Shown here in pieces: positions 1 to 59,700 of a stretch of DNA of 64,000 bases. This DNA comes from Convolutriloba macropyga (Eukaryota). The first letter of the stretch is position 1. Each line of letters opens with the position of its first letter. Position numbers and translations under genes: made by a program. The notes beneath the pieces are model-generated. The model was not told the DNA's origin and ran no database searches. It saw only the letters and a program-made list of their open reading frames with translations. Location: assembly GCF_964194025.1 (NCBI RefSeq), contig NC_134468.1:12028001-12092000 (forward strand), in the 5' to 3' direction.

Positions 1-1582
1 CATAAGTTTGATGACAAAAAAAGAGCATTTCAGACAAGCAGCTTGATGTCGGTGTGTCTAAGGACTATCCGGGAAGATTTCAATCTGGTGGACAGTGAGA
101 TGGTTGAACGGCACATGGCAGAAGTATCGTCAGCATCTTCATTTAGTGACCCTATGCCAGCTCAGTTATTCAAAAGTTTCTGCAGATCTAACATCGTCGA
201 TATTGTTGATATGATAAACAGTGCGCTCACGAGTGGGATATTTCCGAGTATCTTGAAGGAAGGTATTACTAAGCCTCTCCTGAAGCCAGGTGAAGACAAA
301 GAGACTCCTGTTAGCTATCGCCCTGTAACGAATCTGAAATGGTAAGGAAAACTGCCAGAACGTATTGCACACAATTAACGACACATCTTGACGCAATTGA
401 CAAATGGCCCGTCATGCAATCAGCATACCGTCAAAAGTCACTCTACAGAAACTAGCCTGATTTGGTTCTCAAACGTGATATGCAAAATGACATCCAGAAA
501 CAAATCCTTGTTGATGGTGTCGCTTAACCTCAGCAGCGCTTTTGATACAGTTCAGCACCACCTCATGACTGACATCTTGAAGCCTTTTGGTCTCCGCGGC
601 GCTGTTGCAAACTTTTTTGATACGTATCTTCGAGACAGAACAGTGAAAGTCCTAGTTGCAAATGTTCTAGCAGATTCTATCGAGCAACCAACCGGTGTTC
701 CGCAAGGGAGTATTCTAGGGCCTTTGCTCTTCCTACTTAATCTTAATTCTCTATTTCAAGTACTTGACGCGATTGCGTGCCTCTATCATTTTTGCGCTGA
801 CGATTCTCAATTGTTATTTGAAATACATGAAGGACGATTATAATCGAAATGTAAAGAATTAGTTAAACGAGTTGAAGTGTTTTGACTCGTTGAAGTTGAA
901 AATCAACAAAGACAAAACTGAGCTAATAGTTTTCAAGCCCAACACTTTTGACAGGAACATCCCAAAAAAAGCATTGTTCGGAGAACTTGTCATCGAATAA
1001 CCTTCAATCAGAATACTGGGTTTTCTTTTCGACAATTCCTTGATCAAGATCAACGTCATTTATTTGTCAGATGCTACATTTCATCGCGACTTGACTATTG
1101 TAATGCATTATATTATTACTGCCTACCTGAAAAAAGACTGAAAAAGCTTCAGAAAGTCCAGAATGCCGCAGTACGCTTTATTTTTGGAAAACCTCGTTCA
1201 ACAAGAACAACACAGCTGATGAAAGAGCTGCATTAAATACCAATTTAACAACGAATTCAGTCTAAAGTAGGCTGTCTTATGCACAAGGTGAAGAACAAAA
1301 ATGCTCCCGCGTATCTGTAAAGTCTGTTCCGACTTAATGTTAACTCTGCTAAGCCAAATAGGCGTGAAATGTTTCGGGTGCCTACTGGTAGAACAAATTT
1401 CCAGAAAGCTGCTTTCAAGAACAGTGGATGCCGCTTCAGGAATGACCTGCTTAGAAAAGAAGTAAATTACAAAGTGTTCAAGCAGATGCTAAAAACGATG
1501 TTTTGTGCCAAGCCTACTGATTCTTATTGATGCACTTTTGAGATCAGAAAAAGTGCTAAAGCCTCCATCATCATCATCATCT
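1..1582 (+). mobile_element. Decayed L2/CR1-group non-LTR retrotransposon (RT and C-terminal part of ORF2, 3' UTR, tail); runs off the left edge
   Basis: Broken ORFs carry RT motifs SYRPVTNL, SAFDTVQH, GVPQGSILGPLLFLL and FCADD (YADD-like), followed by the L2-type C-terminus RLDYCNAL..LP..LKKLQKVQNAAVRFI. Several in-frame stops. 3' stem-loop GCACTTTT/AAAAGTGC (1532-1556) and (CAT)5 tail (1566-1580). Confidence 0.92.
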
Positions 1583-2860: not shown

Positions 2861-5800
2861 AAAACAGTTGGAAAAATGGATCTGTTCCGTTTGCCCCCCC
2901 CCCGCCCCCGTTTCGTATGCTCCCCCAGTTACAGAGCACGTGTCATTACATGGTAACTCGCTATGTAAAAAAGGCACGTGGGTCTGGGGGTTACAAATAA
3001 TATGCACCCACTAAGCTGGGGGCAGAAAAGTAAAAGATCCCAAAAAATTTCCTTGAAAACATTCAGTAAAAAACGAATGTACTTCAGGCTGAACTTAGTA
3101 CACTTCTTGCTTCATGAAAACTGATGAATTAGGAAGCTTACCAGCCTATTGTATTTCAGATAGGAAAGAAACAGAAAAGTATTTCAGATAAAACAGATAA
3201 AAGAAACAGAAAAAAGTCGAGATCTCTTAGCAAAAAATGACCCAAATCAATCAAAATCATCATTATAATTAGAAATTTAGTCTAGCAGTCATTCAATCGG
3301 GTACAACAAGAACTTTTTTCGTTTTTGAAGAAACAACTGACGTCCGTCCCTAGTCGACTCAAATGGTTATCTTGCATGATTACCATTAACCTCGCAATAC
3401 AGCATCACCTTTCTCTTAGCAATACAGCATCACCTTTTTAAAAACTTTCTGCGCAAAATGAGAACAGGCTTCTATATATATGGACGGAACAGTCAGCCCC
3501 CCCCCCCCCCCCCCCCCCCATGAAACATCACAGCGGTGTAATTAAATTTACCGTAAGAACGCACTGTATTTTAAACTTACATCAATATGCTAGGCTCTTG
3601 GAGCAAAGCGTTGAATCAATGCTATACTAACTAAAATGCAAATTAACAAGACAGCCATTTGGTCTCGAGTCGTGGTAACAATTAGGTTAACTCAAAAATA
3701 GGGGAAAAACGATTGCTCCATAACTAAAAATGGTTCAAGAAAAAAACGAATTACTCATTTTTATTCCACTTCTTCAGCTAATAATTACAGCTTTCTAGCT
3801 ATTAAGTAAGTCATATGGAATATAACGAGAATCAATTCGATAAATATATCCTTCTATTCACGAATTCAGCAAAAACCAATATTTCGCAAAAGTCTTAAGA
3901 ATTTACAATCAATCGATAGAAAACAAATAAAGTTTAAACGGTTAGAAACGATAAGAGATCAAGTTTGCATAAAAATACGTTGAAGGTAAATGTTAAACTA
4001 GACCCAAATTGGGCAATTTATAGCCCAGTACATAATAGCCGGTCGACAAACGTCGTTCTGTTGTTCGCTAGCTAATAAAAATAAAGCGTGAAAGGGGTGG
4101 AACAATAAATTAAATGAATTTGACCCATTTCTGACAAGTAAGTGACGCTTTTGTCGGTCAGGGTTAATCTCAAAATGTTTGCTGATGACTTCTAAACAAA
4201 GATTAGGTTCATGATTCCTTTGGAAGATAACGCAAAATTTGCAATCTAAACAACAGCCGAAACAAATTTAGCAAGTTTTTGTTTGTTTCTTGTCTTTGGG
4301 TGATTCTCTCTTTGCGTATGTACATTGCCCGTAAACAGACTTAGAGTTGTTATAGCGGCGGTGAACAATTAACCCGTTTCGAGTTCACTCTAAAAATAGG
4401 TCATCTAACTCGCCCCCTGAAAAGTTCCTTGGCCGACAACAAAGAAACGTGAATGTCCTACAATACCACTTTCAACATACAGACGCGATCATGTAGTCAC
4501 TATACAATTTTGTAAGTCAGTCGGTCACCCTAATTACATACAGTCTAAAATAGCCTAACAGTCGAAAATAAAACACTCGACCTTGGAACATAATCGCTCA
4601 ATAATTTTACCAAAATTGTGAAACTATCTGAAATGTGGTAATTTTGCATACATAAACTGAATTTAGCTTATGGATAAGGTAAGAAAGGATGGATACAAAA
4701 AACCCAAAAAATAAAGAGTTGGGGGGTGGGGGTTCGGTTTCAAAGACTGAATGGAAACAGTTACGAACAGCTACGATAGCAAAGTTGTTTGGTCAATATA
4801 GGCAACAAAGTTGGATTATCTGGCAATAACAGAAGCAAGTTAGAAAAGATAAGAATTTGAACTGAATTCACAGTTTGTTTAAACAACTCAATTTAGAATC
4901 AGAAGCGACACGCGTTTGCAATAGCAGAGCTTGTCTTAGATGTCAGTTCAATTTCACACTCGAGCTGTTCCAACCAAAATATGCCTCACTTCTCTCCTCT
5001 TACAGAACTAGGAAAAATAAGACACACTCACTTGGGAAAAGCTTCCGCTTTCTGCGGCGGCGACACTAAACTCAGTCCCTACCACGAAGGAAGTATGGAT
5101 TTATGCAAAAAGAGAAAGATAGAATAGCTCTATGGCAGATAGCAGGGCTTAAAGTTCATCCTAATTAGGCGTAACAATTAGTGTCGGTTGTTGTCTGTCG
5201 AAAGCATTGACGTCAACAAAACACGCAAACGCCACTGACTAATTTACAGTTTACAGATAGACAACGAGATGTTGGTTAGATATCATTGACTAAATTAAGT
5301 CGTGAATTTCATCGACAAAACAGGACTTCAGAGCCTACAATTACTTACTGAATTTTTAAAAACCAGAATTATCATTTTCCCTTTACCAACGCAAACAGAC
5401 TTTCCTTCCGATAATTACGATAAAAAATTATAAATAATAATTATGACAAATAAATCAAAAAAATGCATAACAATGCGAATTACGCGGATAACCCCCTCCA
5501 CCTAAACACAGAATTTTTAATCATAATTTAACTCATTTAAATTTTTCTCAAATATTGCAGCTATTCTAATAAATGTCACTAAATTACCAGACCTATTAAA
5601 ATTCAAACAAAAACTTAACAGGACAAATTCTGAAATAACAACCAAAACTTTCGAGAATGAAGGATTGACTAACTACACAAAATTAGCGACAATATATTAC
5701 ACTGACAAAGTATTACACACACAAAAATTCAGACAAAGTTTTACATAAAAACTACTAGATAACTACCATCAAATCGTTAGAACGATCAACAAATAGAAAA

Positions 5801-6096
5801 AAAACGGCTTACCTTGGCTATTTGATGGACCGTGCAAAATTTAAAAAAAAACAAATAATGAGACAAGCGGGCAAAACTCAAATCGTTTGAGTACTAATTT
5901 CTATTTAGAAAGTCAAGTGGTGCATAAGTAGTTCAAAACCGAAAAATCACATTGGAACAAAATAGAACTAAATGTCAGAATGTCCAATTCATCAAAATCA
6001 ATGACTTCATTTTGGAACCCTTAAAACGACGAACATAGTCTACAGAAGGCCAAAATAGCTGGTAAACAGACTAGCGCACCGTAAAATTAACATAGA

Positions 6097-7194
6097 AACA
6101 TACCCGGCAGATTGCCGGAAAATCGCCGCCGTTGATTCCAATAAGCATGATTGGGATTGAAAGAATAGAAGATATTGAAAAAAAAAGATTTTTGTACAAA
6201 AACATTTTTTAAGTCCGATTTATTTTGATGGCATTTCGTAGTTGAACATAACGTACTTCTGTTTCTTAGAGAGAAGCTACAGGGGCTACTATCAATACCA
6301 ATAAGCATTAGAGATGGTAACTAAGACTTATAGGAACGACGTTCAAATAGCGGGCATATAAAATTGGGCTTTATGGGTTTATCCCGTTTCTACTTCTGAC
6401 TTCAATTTTTTATACTGACTCTGTTCATTTTTAATTGCTTTGCTGAGCAACTGATGTTCAAAATCACTTTTAGCAGAAAGAGAGAAGAGAGAAACTAGCC
6501 TAGAGAAGTCAAAAAGATATCACGCAAAATGTTGAAAAAGCGGCAAAATGAGGTAAAGCGAAACATTTTTTTATTCGACGAAGTAAAAAAACATAGCAGG
6601 ACAAGTCCTGACGTACAATTCAAAGAATTTTCATTGACTTTACAAACAATTAGACCTAGAACGGACAATGAGTGAATTGGGAAAGCCATTTCTAAAAAAA
6701 AATCATATGAAAAGAAACAAAAAAAAAACAGAAAATCAATGTCAAAATGCTGCTAGGGAGAACACAAAACCACTAGTGAAATATGTAATTTTGATTCTAA
6801 CAAAAAACTAAGTCCAGAATGAGCTGTGAATGGAATGGGAAAACTATTTAGAAAATCCGATCCAAAAAAATCGAAAAAACAGTAAAAATCAGAGTGAAAT
6901 TGCCGCATGTGAACAAGAAAACCACTACCGAGAAACCGAATTTTTGTTCAAACACCGTTTTCTCACTCTACTTTAAAATTAGAGCAAAAAATTCACGCCG
7001 CAAAACCACTCGCTTTTTCGCTCCATTTCCTGTTTCAGCGTGACCAAAATCACCACTCCAATTTGACTTCAAAAATCATGAAAATGTGTGAACAGATCTT
7101 AAAAAAAAGACAGCGCCCCAATACAATTCAAAATCTTTGAATTGTAAAAAAGGAGCGCTATAATAGCCGGCTGAGAAGATGAGGGCGGCTATTA
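6097..7194 (-). mobile_element. HINE family B, with a nested family C element
   Basis: AACATAC + hairpin CCGGCA-GAT-TGCCGG + SIR AAT(C/A)GCCGC; far end AATAGCCG...GCGGCTATT. 6097-6590 is nearly identical to 15119-15600. Confidence 0.85.
6590..7146 (-). mobile_element. HINE family C nested in family B
   Basis: AACATAG + hairpin CAGGAC-AA-GTCCTG + SIR TACAATTCAAAGA; far-end palindrome TACAATTCAAAATCTTTGAATTGTA. Absent from the sister B copy at ~15600. Confidence 0.85.
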
Positions 7195-54898: not shown

Positions 54899-55488
54899 AA
54901 CATAACCGAATAACGTCGGGCAAATTGCTCTCAAATAACTAGCGAGCGCTTGGCTTCATCAGTAGCTAGCCACGGTTTAGTGAGGCTACCTTTAGCTTAA
55001 TTGACGGGGGGTGAGGCGAGCGCAGCGGGTGAGGTGGGGGTGCACGGGGAGGGGCTGATGGGGGCAGTAGGGGTGGGGTCAACGATGGGGATGGCTGGTC
55101 TTCTTCGGTAGGGAAGGGGATTGGAGAGGGGGGGTGGGGTGAATTGAGGGGGGGGGGGCTGATGTGTTTGGGGGGTCAACCTCTAAGAACCACCCGTCAC
55201 ACCATAAGTTCAAATAACTACATTCAGGTTAATATATACCACTATTAAGATTTAAAGTGAAAAATGGCACCAGTTTCGGCGCACTTTTCATTTGACTTTT
55301 GAGTAATAAAATGCCGCCAATTGAGTTCAGCTGCTTGAAATTGCGATTGAGAGGGAATTTTAGATCACGAAAAACTCAAGAAGTCAAGGGCGTAAAAGTC
55401 ACTCGAAAAGTGAGAAAGGTCAAGCAAAAATTTTGCATAAAAAAAGCCATACACGTTTACAATAATTGCTTCTCTACGAGAGCAATTA
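54899..55488 (-). mobile_element. HINE family A with the longest G-rich core
   Basis: AACATAACCGAATAACGTCGGGCAAATTGCTCTCAAA ... AATAATTGCTTCTCTACGAGAGCAATT; left half like 36215, right half like 2620-2860 (mosaic). Confidence 0.85.
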
Positions 55489-55744
55489 AAAAATGACAAA
55501 GAATAACGTGGGTTATAAAATCTAGCGTCATCGTTTACCACTGGCAGTTTACTTTGAAGAAGCGAGAAACGGTATCAGAGCTTATTAACGACAACTTGAG
55601 TGATGTAAATTGTAAAATAAAGTCGAAATGTAGAAAAGCAAAGGCAATTCTATGCGCCAAGAGTGCACATAAAATCGTCCCTTAAATAACAGTTAGAAAT
55701 TTACTGTTTAATTCTGAGCTTAGTGACACCTATCAAATGCTCAG

Positions 55745-55790: not shown

Positions 55791-56078
55791 TTAGTCAATT
55801 TTATATTTCAATTTTTCCAACAAATTATCCATGTATTTCAGTTTAGCAATATTTTCAGTAACTCCATCCTTGTCTCTCTCCTGAAAAGCGACACTCAAAC
55901 TCTTCAACACTTCAATTCTTCTGTCGGTTATATCCGACCTCAGCACTTCCAATGTTCGACCTTCTTCGGTATCCACAATTTCGTTCCATTCCATTATGGT
56001 CATTAGGAAATCTTCAGATTGTGCAATTTGATCTTCTGCAGAACCCGTTTCATCATCTCCCAAAGCCGAATCATGAAA
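55791..56078 (-). CDS. HSCB: HSCB/Hsc20 exon 2 (C-terminal ISCU-binding domain)
   Basis: FHDSALG...EDFLMTIMEWNE...LSVAFQERDKDGVTENIAKLKYMDNLLEKLK resembles FLIEIMEINE..AF..D...A....KMRYFSNIEEKIK; CTCAG acceptor with a CTAAC branch-like site ~25 nt upstream. Confidence 0.9.
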   Translation of the reverse strand, partial: FHDSALGDDETGSAEDQIAQSEDFLMTIMEWNEIVDTEEGRTLEVLRSDITDRRIEVLKSLSVAFQERDKDGVTENIAKLKYMDNLLEKLKYKID

Positions 56079-56330
56079 CTGAGCCGATATTAAAACATTA
56101 AAGTGTTAGTTTTCCTTGCAAAAAAACAAATTTGGATATTGGTTAGAATAGCTTCTTTAAAACCATAGCACGCATTGCCTCGTTTTTTTTCTATTCCTTA
56201 AGTCAAAGTTCATTTTAGAAATTAAAATTTTCACAATCTTGCAAGGCAAGTTTCTTTTTTGCAAGACTGGGTCTTTTATTAATTGGTCAGAATTAATTTG
56301 TCCAGATTAAAAATCGGCTCAATTTCTAAC

Positions 56331-56789
56331 AGTGATGTCGTTGAAAACTATCCTCGAAAGATATTTAGCTCGTAAGTAAGGGGAAAGCAGGACCGTCAAA
56401 GCGTCATTAACCATGCTTGAAATTTCTTGCGAAAACTCCTGCTCCTCTTGGCTTGAATTTGAGAATTTGTCCGGGTGCAAACTTGCTTGAAGCTTGCGAT
56501 AGTTTTTCTTGCCCAGCTCAAGGTCTGTTTCAAATTCAGCATCAATTCCCAGAATTTCAAAATAGGTTAGCTGAGGAATATTCCCACATCTTAATTTGGG
56601 CGAGTTCAGGGTTAAAACTGTGGGAGGTTTCAAAACTTTTCCACTCACAGAGCAGAAAAATAAATCTTTGATGGCCACTGAACTTGCAGCACGGGGCAAG
56701 ATTTTGCTAACAGGTACGTTAAAGGCACTGCGATTCAATTTTGCAACATGTGAGGTAAACTTCATCGGTGTTAGCACGTTTGTTTTCAT
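56331..56789 (-). CDS. HSCB: HSCB/Hsc20 exon 1 (mitochondrial presequence plus J-domain); start could alternatively be 56765 or 56969
   Basis: YFEILGI..YRKLQASLHPDKF..EQEFSQEISSMVNDAL.VLLSPYLRAKYL is the HscB-type J-domain with HPD; basic, acid-free N-terminus from MKTNVL; best phase-0 donor ACT|GTTAGA. Confidence 0.9.
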
Positions 56790-59700
56790 TTTTTGTTTCG
56801 CAAGAAAGTTATTAGCTGGCTTCGTAGTCTCAAACCTCAGTTTTCTGTTCTCAGCTTGACATGCAAATTTAGCCACTAATTGAAATCGCGGAACATGATA
56901 GAAAAGGTCTTCTTTTGCCGTACACAAAATTGATTTTAAGCAATTCCGTGTATTACATGCAAAGCCCATAGCACTGAAATACTCATTTTTCTCCCGACAT
57001 AGATCTCGTCCAAATCAATATCATAAACGTTCCAGTTCAACAATATTTCTATCGCAGCACTGTTTTCGAGACTTAATTAAAAATTACTGCAAAATTTATT
57101 GTTAAAAAATTGTTTCTGCATGTTTCTGACTAGCTTTATAAGCGCCAATTCAACTATCGCAGGTTTTAATAATTTAGGACGAATTTTCTCAGCCGGATAC
57201 ATCGCAGCTGCTATCATCTACGCCCAAGCTCGGAAACGAACCCCCGCAAGTGTAAGCACCACCTCGCCTCTCAAATGTTGGCAGAGTTTAGTTGTACAAA
57301 CTGCGCCATTGCCCATATTTTACGCCTTATAATTACGTTTCTAATAATCGTGACAAAACTTGCACAAGCTCAGTTCTCTATGGAATATCACAAAATTTGT
57401 TTCCACAAGAATGTGTAAAAAACAAATCAGTAAATTTGCACTAATAGTTTATGTCAGCCCGGACTCGCCAGTACAGTTTATATTTGCCATTTAAAAGGTA
57501 ATTCTGCACTGCGCGGCGGTGGGTGGGGTGGGGGGTCAGGTCAGCTTTTGGTTAAAAGAAATAGTAATGGGAAAATCAAGTCCTTGGGAAAATATCCACT
57601 GCATGTCGGCATACCAGGTTAACATACGTAGGTACTTCTTCGACAGTTGAATTATCTTGGGACAACGATCCTACTCTAAGTATTCTTAGAGATTACGTAT
57701 CCCTTGCAAGCCTCGAACTCCTGTTCTCATCACAGCAACTTAAATAGTACACACCTAAGCTTTTAGCAACTGCGCCAAGTTCGCGGCAAGCAACAATTTT
57801 CTATTACAACTACAATAAGTTTGCTGAATAGACTTTGCGCATGTCTAAAAATTTACATTAGATAATTTTACCGTAGCCTATTGGCCGACATACCATTTAG
57901 TCGATAAAATTAAATTTTTATGACAACTTAACCACATACACTAATTACCCTCGCATAAAGAGGGTTAAGAAGCGTCTCTTCAGTTTAAAGTAAACACTTA
58001 TTGTTTCAAAATATTTCAAGGCGAAATCAACATTTTTCAAATTATGCAATATATTGTTCACTTTTTTGGTTTATCATTTAAACGTCAACTGGAAATTTGT
58101 CGGCTCGGTCGAGTCTTCTAATTGTCGATTCTTCTAATTTGTATGTCGGCTAATATCCAGAGCCCCAAAATTTACGTACCTATTACACACCTATTTTACA
58201 AGAACAAAGCAAACCTCAAACAATGCAACCCTTTACTTTTTATTATTAGTTGTTTTCGTTTTCTACCCCAAACTGAATTTCTTTCACCAGCCTGCGTGAA
58301 CAATTAATGCGTTTTCTCATTGATAGCGGTTTGTAGAGCCTAATATGAAGTTTGACTAGCCATTATAAATTAAACAAAATACCAACAAGGCCGTAAAAAT
58401 AGAGATAAATCCGATTCACTTGAGGAAAATTTGAGCTACCTCGCCGCATCAGATAAAGAAATTTATCTCGTAGAAATAATTCTTGAAAACTGTTTTGCAT
58501 AAAAAATTTTGAATATCTTCGTCAAATTCTTTCCATATAATACATGCATACATCAATAATAAAAAACGCATCGAAGCATGTAACATATCGTCATATGAAG
58601 CTTGTGTGCAATTTGATATCTAAGACAGGCTATTATGCAGTTGAGGAAACAGGTGAAAAATTCAGGAGAATTCAATCAATGCAGAGGCACCGATCAAAGC
58701 AACTATTAATTTTGAAGGGGAAGCAAAAAAGAAATCGGATTTTATACGCAGCCGTTCAGGCATTTAATATTCGATATGTACTTTGACTATTAGTCGCAAA
58801 TCCGTCTATTGTATCTATTGCATATTGCATTGTTCTCTGAATAATTGAGCAGAGGTTTAGAATAATTTAGACAAAGGAACACAAATCCTCTTAAGAGGGC
58901 ATAAACAGCACTCCCGATAGGACTATCTTACGTCAGTAACCTCATTTCCACAAGCACACTTGAATTGTCGCAACAGCAGAAGCAACTTTCACTTGATATT
59001 CTGCATTATAAATCAGAGATAAAAGAATTTTCTAAGCCTGATCACTAAACAAACGTCCAATATTGAAACATCGACCTGAAGAACGCTTTCACACCTGACA
59101 AAGACCAAATCTTGACCTCAGTTAAACTCAAAACCATATATCAAATATATTACTGCACCCTTCACCCAATCAAGAAACTGTTTTTTTTTCACGTGTTCTA
59201 AAAAGGTTGCAACAAAAGAGTCACCATCAAGGACAAAGCTCACTAAAATCCGGGGCCAACAAGTTATCAAGAGCAAGTTATCAAATTGACAATTTTTTTC
59301 AGAGTTTTGAAGAGCGGCTATAGAGCCGCAACAGAAAAAAAATTAAAATACGCCATTGAATTTTGCCATAAGTTACAATTTCCAAAATTTGCATCAGTTT
59401 ATTTCTGGACACTTAATTATAACATCGACGGCAAATTTCCTGAAAATAGCTGACATTGAGCCAAATCGGCAAGTACATGCCAAAATCCTCAACCATATTA
59501 TATCATAAAATTTTTGAAGTCATAAAATATATTTAGCAGTTTTAATGGCTAAAAAAGACAATAGAACAAAAAATGAAGGCAAGATTTTCAAATTCACAGA
59601 AACATTTCAAAAACAAAAGGCCAAAAAATGATATTTTTCAGACTAAGCCATAAATCACGGCAAAAACAAAAACAAAAATGCAATACAAAATCAACTATTA

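What the first reader, a model, noticed from the sequence alone, without database searches (positions are those of the whole stretch)
56075..56330. HSCB intron is bracketed by a 14-bp inverted repeat with a frame-neutral offset: candidate introner or splice-controlling stem
Seen (sense strand): ACT|GTTA[GAAATTGAGCCGAT ... ATCGGCTCAG|TTTC]ATGAT. The arms (56326-56313 and 56088-56075) form 14 contiguous RNA pairs whose single G-U wobble is the acceptor G. A second internal inverted pair, CTTGCAAAAAA / TTTTTTGCAAG (56115-56125, 56255-56265), adds MITE-like symmetry. The repeat begins 4 nt inside the donor and ends 4 nt into exon 2, so precise excision gives in-frame ACT GTT AAT GAT (TVND), the same length as the spliced ACT TTT CAT GAT (TFHD). 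Known: introners are TIR elements that become introns using one host and one element splice site. Inference: intron gain from a transposon, or a stem that hides the 3' splice site. No TSD is evident and the donor is predicted, not observed.
Basis: partly seen in the sequence, partly recalled or inferred. Interest (0 to 1): 0.75.

Follow-up and report, generated by a model that had tools for sequence, protein, structure and literature searches.

The report
New hairpin-ended intron in acoel HSCB
The only intron of this acoel worm's iron-sulfur co-chaperone gene HSCB was gained in its own lineage and really has matching inverted ends, but nothing else in the genome resembles it, so it cannot be shown to be a transposon-born intron.

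Summary
A 252-nt GT-AG, phase-0 intron (56330..56079, minus strand) splits the DnaJ and HSCB_C halves of the genome's only HSCB gene. Intron +5..+18 pairs with -10..+4 in 14 contiguous RNA pairs, about -21 kcal/mol, and the G of the acceptor AG is the single G-U.

New evidence:
- The intron is lineage-specific. Symsagittifera roscoffensis and two other acoel-type genomes have an uninterrupted HSCB ORF.
- Starfish and fish share an old phase-0 intron, but it lies 9 codons upstream. All old animal intron positions are empty here.

Against an introner:
- The intron is single-copy in the 1.18 Gb genome.
- The 14-mer occurs about as often as chance predicts, never with an inverted partner, and always with unrelated flanks.
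- There is no target-site duplication.
- The inner "MITE-like" inverted pair is a polymorphic palindrome and is deleted in another haplotype.

A helix this long arises in about 7 of 10,000 random end pairs, so tens are expected genome-wide. No RNA run was available, so the junction rests on homology and frame. The scan has already reported transposon-born and hairpin-ended introns elsewhere in this genome; this is a weaker, orphan case.

Verdict: a real, newly gained intron. The origin of its inverted ends is unresolved, and a splicing role for the stem is untested.

The parts
56331..56789 (-). HSCB exon 1 coding part (J domain). The ORF stays open upstream to an ATG at 56969, so the true start may lie there.
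   Evidence: Translation. Pfam DnaJ PF00226 at residues 75-143, E 8.8e-8. ORF 56319..56969. 52% identity to residues 91-210 of orthologue P0003.
56079..56330 (-). 252-nt phase-0 GT-AG intron, the only intron of the gene. Donor ACT|GTTAGA, acceptor GGCTCAG|TTT, in-frame TGA 10 nt inside.
   Evidence: It is carried by four DNA runs and a second assembly of the same species. It is absent from orthologues in L034, L035 and L036.
56313..56326 (-). 5' arm of the terminal inverted repeat (GAAATTGAGCCGAT), intron positions +5 to +18.
56075..56088 (-). 3' arm (ATCGGCTCAGTTTC). It covers the last 10 intron bases, including the acceptor AG, plus the first 4 bases of exon 2.
56105..56110 (-). ACTAAC branch-site-like motif. 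The branch A at 56106 lies 27 nt upstream of the acceptor G.
   Evidence: Read from the sequence. Its role as a branch site is inferred from the U2 branch consensus.
56115..56125 (-). 3' member of the inner inverted pair (TTTTTTGCAAG in sense). It is polymorphic and I judge it not to be part of any functional unit.
   Evidence: I2. Deletions at 56114-56122 in runs X1-X4. Replaced by TTTCC-----AA in L032.
56255..56265 (-). 5' member of the inner inverted pair (CTTGCAAAAAA in sense). It is also part of a local hairpin of CTTGCAAG motifs.
   Evidence: I2, I6, I7.
55791..56078 (-). HSCB exon 2 coding part (C-terminal domain), with the stop TAA at 55793-55791.
   Evidence: Translation. Pfam HSCB_C PF07743, E 1.1e-13. 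55% identity to residues 205-297 of P0003.

Best explanation
This is an ordinary U2-type GT-AG, phase-0 intron that was gained in this acoel's own lineage. It lies in the linker between the J domain and the C-terminal domain of the single-copy HSCB gene. That gene had lost all ancestral animal introns and is still intronless in related acoels.

The 14-nt inverted repeat at its ends is real but belongs to this locus alone. It is not the terminus of any detectable transposon family, and it has no target-site duplication. I take it to be an incidental feature, arising by chance or by a local inverted copying event in the young intron, rather than the signature of an introner.

In the pre-mRNA the two arms can form a stem of about -21 kcal/mol. 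The stem would bring donor and acceptor within a few nucleotides of each other and bury donor positions +5/+6, the end of the pyrimidine tract and the acceptor AG.

Shown here: the sequence, the stem's predicted stability, its uniqueness in the genome, and the absence of the intron from relatives. Inferred: the splice junction (from frame and homology, not from RNA). Not shown: any effect of the stem on splicing.
For: Gene and junction:
- DnaJ lies on one side and HSCB_C on the other.
- A stop codon lies 3 codons past the donor.
- With the acceptor at 56079, only two GT donors keep the J domain intact: 56330 (GTTAGA) and 56348 (GTTTTC).
- Orthologue cDNA P0003 has FNNAT where this gene has FNDIT, so exon 1 runs to 56331.
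- An ACTAAC motif lies 27 nt before the AG.
- There is one HSCB gene in the genome.

Gain:
- S. roscoffensis HscB (P0012, named by NCBI) is one uninterrupted 283-aa ORF on a 520-kb contig.
- P0006 and P0007 are likewise uninterrupted on 430-490 kb contigs.
- In the tree these five sequences form one clade (99/98). The window groups with P0003 and S. roscoffensis (88/88), and P0006+P0007 are sister to that group.
- Starfish and fish share a phase-0 intron at GLY[LM]|LEL, 9 codons upstream. Starfish and spider share one after HPDKF... None of these positions is occupied here.

Not a repeat family:
- The whole-genome DNA search finds only the intron itself.
- The 14-mer has 11 exact hits, 2 of them here. 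A uniform model predicts about 17.
- None of 29 inspected sites has an inverted partner within 1.5 kb, and their flanks are unrelated.
- The paired 9-mer cores at this spacing occur only here.
- Read depth over the intron equals that over the exons, whereas a true high-copy repeat at 55300-55495 is about 10,000-fold deeper.
- The inverted ends of a transposon-type intron noted elsewhere on this chromosome (L044, GGAATC...) are unrelated in sequence.

Chance rate: 2e-4 to 7e-4 per intron.
Against: - A chance rate of 7e-4 per intron is low, and the repeat ends sharply and symmetrically 4 nt from each splice site. That is how a transposon end or a selected stem would look.
- Earlier notes of this scan, which I did not verify, report many transposon-born and hairpin-ended new introns in this genome. 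This raises the prior that a new intron with paired ends belongs to that class.
- No RNA data were available, so neither the junction nor any effect of the stem has been observed.
- The linker is variable in length. This gene has 6-7 more residues there than other acoels, so homology of positions is less certain there than inside the domains.
Confidence: 0.5

Rival explanations
1. Orphan transposon-born intron. A small DNA element with inverted-repeat ends (56326..56075) inserted into the intronless HSCB coding sequence. It is spliced using a host-side GT 4 nt outside its left end and an AG inside its right arm. Its family has since died out or was never numerous, and the target-site duplication has decayed or was never made.
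For: - The 14-nt inverted repeat is sharp-edged and 13/14 identical.
- The size (252 nt) and AT-richness are typical of MITEs.
- The intron is a lineage-specific gain in an otherwise intronless gene.
- Published introner families use one host and one element splice site, and some lack a TSD (PMC9860276).
- The scan's earlier notes report transposon-born introns in this genome (unverified here).
Against: - No second copy of the element, of its ends, or of the paired ends exists anywhere in 1.18 Gb.
- There is no TSD of any length from 2 to 8.
- The interior is not palindromic, and overall folding is only mildly better than shuffles (z = -2.06).
- If the element were old enough to have lost its family and its TSD, a neutral 14-nt repeat should have decayed as well.
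- Introner families are defined by sequence similarity, with at least 5 copies per genome.
Confidence: 0.2
2. Selected splice-site-pairing stem. Whatever the origin of the repeat, it is maintained because the RNA helix helps to define or regulate removal of a young intron with a mediocre donor (GTTAGA). It could do so by holding the two splice sites together, or by hiding the AG so that splicing is slowed or made conditional.
For: - The stem is predicted to be stable and dominant (-20.8 kcal/mol, pair probabilities 0.82-1.00).
- It covers donor +5/+6 and the acceptor AG.
- All six within-species intron variants lie outside the arms.
- End-pairing stems are a known feature of euglenid nonconventional introns and of MITE-derived introns (PMC11282704).
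- The scan's notes describe stem-closed introns in this genome (unverified here).
Against: - The polymorphism test has no power. About 0.7 variants are expected in 28 of 252 nt, so finding none has a probability of about 0.5.
- No orthologous intron exists in another species with which to test covariation.
- The stem-closed introns noted elsewhere in this genome are mostly non-GT introns. Earlier follow-ups judged end pairing of ordinary GT-AG introns to be at chance level.
- U1 can bind the donor during transcription, long before the 3' arm is made (general knowledge).
Confidence: 0.2
3. Old intron that slid. This would be the ancient deuterostome phase-0 intron at GLY[LM]|LEL, retained here, shifted by 27 nt, and lost independently in the other acoels.
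For: The phase is the same (0) and the position is only 9 codons away, in a linker of variable length.
Against: - It needs at least two independent losses among the acoel relatives plus a 27-nt slide.
- The 9 residues between the two positions (SRIVFNDIT) align with residues encoded after the intron in starfish and fish (LELNGLTIE) and are present in the intronless acoel genes (AKITFNNAT, LKVLYDEDV).
- Every other ancestral intron of the gene is gone.
Confidence: 0.05
4. Different excision. The RNA would be cut at the edges of the inverted repeat (56326..56075, GA...TC) or at other non-canonical sites, giving ...TVND... instead of ...TFHD....
For: The product has the same length and stays in frame. 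The scan's notes report non-GT introns with paired ends in this genome (unverified here).
Against: A canonical GT, an AG and an ACTAAC branch motif are all in place at the right distances. A GA...TC intron has no AG acceptor. A GA(56326)-AG(56079) intron would shift the frame into a stop (read from the sequence).
Confidence: 0.05

Closest known systems
Introners (intron-generating transposons; Gozashti et al. 2022, PMC9860276, and 2025, PMC12130899)
   Same: A lineage-specific intron at a new position. It has inverted-repeat ends, one splice site outside and one inside the repeat-delimited segment, and causes no net change in mRNA length.
   Different: Introners are families of sequence-similar introns (5 to over 2,000 copies per genome), often with TSDs. 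This sequence is unique in the genome, has no TSD, and has an interior unlike any repeat.
MITE-derived and stem-closed non-canonical introns (Fritillaria borealis; euglenid nonconventional introns; reviewed in PMC11282704)
   Same: Base pairing close to both intron ends would bring the ends together. As in euglenids, where pairing typically starts at +4, this stem starts a few bases inside the 5' end (+5).
   Different: Those introns have non-GT/AG borders and occur in large numbers. This one has canonical GT-AG borders and a normal branch motif, and it is a single case.
Conserved animal HSCB intron at GLY[LM]|LEL (seen here in Asterias amurensis and Centropristis striata)
   Same: Phase 0, at the end of the J domain and the start of the linker.
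   Different: It lies 9 codons upstream. The residues in between are homologous coding sequence in all species compared, and acoel relatives have no intron at either place.
Splice-site-sequestering or splice-site-bridging stems in yeast and metazoan pre-mRNAs
   Same: A helix links the donor-proximal and acceptor-proximal sequence.
   Different: Those cases rest on mutational or covariation evidence. None is available here.

Membership tests
U2-type GT-AG spliceosomal intron | GT donor, AG acceptor and a branch-site motif 18-40 nt upstream of the AG | tested here: met
   ACT|GTTAGA ... ACTAAC (27 nt) ... CAG|TTT.
U2-type GT-AG spliceosomal intron | Removal restores an open frame that is colinear with orthologous proteins | tested here: met
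   The 248-aa product carries DnaJ plus HSCB_C and is colinear with P0003 and P0012. The intron contains a stop 10 nt in.
U2-type GT-AG spliceosomal intron | Spliced junction observed in RNA | not testable with these tools
   The run search returned only four DNA runs. Their contigs carry the intron.
Introner | Several sequence-similar copies in the same genome (families of 5 or more copies; PMC9860276) | tested here: not met
   Only the locus itself is found. The 14-mer occurs at chance frequency, unpaired and with unrelated flanks. Read depth is single-copy.
Introner | Intron at a lineage-specific position, absent from orthologues | tested here: met
   Absent from three related genomes and from starfish, fish, spider and crinoid at this position.
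Introner / MITE (DNA-transposon type) | Terminal inverted repeats | tested here: met
   14 nt, 13/14 identical.
Introner / MITE (DNA-transposon type) | Target-site duplication flanking the inverted repeats | tested here: not met
   The flanks ...CACTGTTA and ATGATTCG... share no direct repeat of 2-8 nt.
Stem-closed (structure-defined) introns | Stable helix joining the two intron ends | tested here: met
   -20.8 kcal/mol, present in both the MFE and centroid structures.
Stem-closed (structure-defined) introns | Pairing conserved or compensated in homologous introns | not testable with these tools
   No other species or paralogue carries this intron. Haplotypes of the same species are identical in the arms.
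HSCB / Hsc20 co-chaperone | N-terminal J domain with an HPD motif plus the HSCB C-terminal helical domain | tested here: met
   PF00226 and PF07743. LHPDKF is present. The protein falls in a clade with S. roscoffensis HscB.

The most novel reading that the evidence does not exclude
The intron may be the canonical GT-AG member of a genome-wide class of recently gained, hairpin-ended introns in this acoel. In that class end-to-end pairing, not membership of any one transposon family, would be the shared feature. Pairing would be part of how new introns are created or first recognised: inserted DNA with self-complementary ends would be tolerated in coding sequence because the stem presents nearby cryptic splice sites to the spliceosome.
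Probability: 0.2. Interest if true: 0.7.

Novelty: new member of a known kind. Interest (0 to 1): 0.35.

Why it matters
Dated, lineage-specific intron gains in animals are rare, and their mechanism is usually unknown. Here an essential single-copy gene that is intronless in related acoels carries one new intron. That makes a clean before-and-after comparison.

If the inverted ends prove to be the footprint of the inserted DNA, or a stem needed for splicing, this case would tie intron birth in a bilaterian to hairpin-ended insertions. If they are incidental, the case calibrates how often such stems arise by chance (about 7 in 10,000 introns). That would caution against calling an introner from inverted ends alone.

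Tried and rejected
- **RNA evidence:** the single run search gave four DNA runs of one study and no RNA. Laying them showed only that the intron is present in all of them, plus polymorphisms. No transcript-derived full-length protein of this species appeared in the protein searches.
- **Repeat family:** I tried a whole-genome DNA search, the 14-mer with up to 1 mismatch (729 hits against 419 for the reversed control, a mild excess with unrelated flanks), and the paired 9-mer cores at this spacing. All found only this locus.
- **TSD of 2-8 nt:** none found.
- **Tandem-duplication origin:** I compared the intron start with the exon 2 start, and the exon 1 end with the intron end, by eye. There is no convincing direct repeat. 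A weak TCGGCT recurrence 17-18 nt apart at the start of exon 2 matches only about 11 of 18 positions.
- **Inner inverted pair as evidence of MITE symmetry:** rejected. It is a repeated palindromic octamer, sits asymmetrically (66 nt from the 5' end against 37 nt from the 3' end), and is deleted in other haplotypes.
- **Intronic snoRNA, miRNA or other known RNA:** Rfam gives nothing inside the intron.
- **Alternative splice sites:** every other in-frame pair cuts into the J domain or into exon 2, or uses a poor GTTTTC donor that would drop residues conserved in orthologues.
- **Same ends as a transposon-type intron noted elsewhere on this chromosome:** the L044 inverted repeat (GGAATC...) is unrelated.
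- **Findings look-ups:** one was malformed and one found nothing.

Full report
**What is there**

On the minus strand the window carries a two-exon gene for the iron-sulfur cluster co-chaperone HSCB.
- Exon 1 (coding to 56331) holds the J domain: Pfam DnaJ, E 8.8e-8.
- Exon 2 (56078 to the stop at 55793-55791) holds the HSCB C-terminal domain: PF07743, E 1.1e-13.
- Between them lie 252 nt that begin GTTAGA, contain an in-frame TGA 10 nt in, carry ACTAAC 27 nt before the end, and end CAG.

I listed every GT/GC-AG pair around the site that keeps the frame open. With the acceptor at 56079, only two GT donors leave the J domain intact: 56330 (GTTAGA) and 56348 (GTTTTC). The closest orthologue is P0003, a 297-aa ORF on a 944-nt marine metatranscriptome contig. 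It reads ...YLAKITFNNAT... where this gene reads ...YLSRIVFNDIT|. It is still a prediction.

**The inverted repeat**

The repeat finder reports arms 56075-56094 and 56307-56326. The core is 14 nt, 13/14 identical as DNA. As RNA it forms 14 contiguous pairs with one U-G, and the G is base 56079, the acceptor G.
- Duplex energy is -20.8 kcal/mol.
- Pair probabilities are 0.82-1.00 in a pre-mRNA with 60-nt exon flanks.
- The centroid fold keeps the stem.

The stem spans intron +5..+18 and -10..+4. It would cover donor positions +5/+6, the end of the pyrimidine tract, the AG and four exon bases.

The second, inner pair also exists (I2). It is made of the self-complementary octamer CTTGCAAG, which occurs three times, plus A/T runs. 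It sits asymmetrically in the intron. It is hit by deletions in all four DNA runs and is replaced in a second assembly of the same species (L032, 98% identical overall). I do not count it as evidence for anything.

**Is it more than chance?**

A helix of 14 or more pairs (G-U allowed) between two 30-nt end windows arose in 4 of 20,000 shuffles of these ends. It arose in 6.7e-4 of 300,000 random pairs of 30-mers from this window. That is improbable for one intron. But an animal genome with about 10^5 introns should hold tens of such cases, and this scan reads many windows.

**Is it a transposon copy?**

- A DNA search of the whole 1.18 Gb assembly with the intron plus flanks, at E up to 10, found only the intron itself.
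- GAAAYTGAGCCGAT has 11 exact hits, two of them here. A uniform model predicts about 17. With one mismatch there are 729 hits against 419 for the reversed control.
- None of the 29 other sites fetched has an inverted partner within 1.5 kb, even allowing two mismatches. Their flanks share nothing with the intron or with each other.
- The paired cores TGAGCCGAT ... ATCGGCTCA at 205-235 nt spacing occur only here.
- Read depth over the intron equals that of the exons. A genuine high-copy repeat just downstream (55300-55495) is about four orders of magnitude deeper.
- The 8-nt flanks of the repeat (CACTGTTA / ATGATTCG) are not a duplication.
- Introner families are defined by sequence similarity, with 5 to over 2,000 copies (PMC9860276). 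That criterion is not met.
- A transposon-type intron noted earlier on this chromosome has unrelated ends (GGAATC...).
- Rfam finds no known RNA in the intron.

**Is the intron old or new?**

A full HMMER search with exon 2 and a profile search gave the relatives.
- P0012 is named by NCBI as HscB of the acoel Symsagittifera roscoffensis. It is a single uninterrupted 283-aa ORF on a 520-kb contig.
- P0006 and P0007 are likewise uninterrupted on 430-490 kb contigs of two other assemblies.
- In a maximum-likelihood tree the five sequences form one clade (99/98). The window groups with P0003 and S. roscoffensis (88/88), and P0006+P0007 are sister to that group.
- Outside the clade, starfish and fish share a phase-0 intron at GLY[LM]|LEL. 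Starfish and spider share one after HPDKF.... A crinoid gene is intronless.

The window's gene has none of these old introns. Its single intron lies 9 codons downstream of the GLYL position, and those 9 residues are homologous coding sequence in every species compared. The genome has only this one HSCB gene. The simplest history is complete intron loss before the acoel-type clade diversified, followed by one gain in this lineage. The alternative is retention with a 27-nt slide and at least two losses, which I rate at about 5%.

**Reading**

The introner label fails its defining test. What produced the 252 nt is unknown. I put about 0.5 on an incidental inverted repeat in a young, ordinary intron, arising by chance or by a local inverted copying event. 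I put about 0.2 on an orphan inverted-repeat element and about 0.2 on a stem kept for splicing. The last two can overlap.

Earlier notes of this scan name the genome Convolutriloba macropyga. They report transposon-born introns and hairpin-ended, mostly non-GT, new introns elsewhere in it. They also report that end pairing of ordinary GT-AG introns was judged to be at chance level. I verified none of this beyond fetching one locus. The notes raise the prior for a class effect but do not decide this case.

All six within-species variants in the intron lie outside the arms. With 28 of 252 nt in the arms, that outcome has a probability of about 0.5 and carries no weight.

**Limits**

- There is no RNA evidence.
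- No sister species carries the intron.
- The whole-genome DNA search skips very common words. The single-copy read depth argues against that loophole here.
- The linker is variable in length: this gene has 32 residues between YL and FLMT, against 25-26 in other acoels.

Noticed in passing
window 55300-55495: A short interspersed repeat lies just downstream of the HSCB 3' end. In four DNA runs thousands of contigs pile up there, with summed depth about 3e5-6e5 against about 42 for the neighbouring single-copy sequence. Many contigs end at 55489-55493, followed by A-rich tails, which looks SINE-like.
   Followed up: no
window 56600-56700 (minus strand; HSCB residues about 35-55): This HSCB has lost three of the four cysteines of the N-terminal CxxC...CxxC motif kept by its relatives: RAASSVAIKDLFFCSVSGKV here against CWNCSAQITDLFFCSQCGKV in P0003, and similar in S. 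roscoffensis and P0006. It is the only HSCB gene in the genome.
   Followed up: partly
L034:3351-4880 (S. roscoffensis contig): The last 77 codons of HSCB and a downstream segment are repeated about 1.37 kb further on. There are identical ORFs at 3351-3512 and 4719-4880, and P0004 equals the C-terminus of P0012. This is either a local tandem duplication or an assembly artefact.
   Followed up: no
L036:3001-3678 and 6074-6678: Two HSCB-type ORFs lie in tandem about 3 kb apart in this related genome. The first begins at the second CxxC (MFICSQC) and may be truncated.
   Followed up: no
window 388-843 (+): An ORF fragment matches reverse transcriptase (RVT_1, E 1.3e-12), so it is a retroelement remnant.
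   Followed up: no
window 1-64000: The plus strand is markedly A-rich over T (23,236 A against 17,767 T) at 36% G+C.
   Followed up: no
window 56319-56969 (-): The exon 1 ORF stays open 60 codons upstream of the ATG at 56789, to an ATG at 56969 (MGFACNTRNC...). A prokaryote-style gene call in ENA (P0001) uses that start and reads through the donor to ...ITVRN*. The true start codon is unresolved.
   Followed up: no
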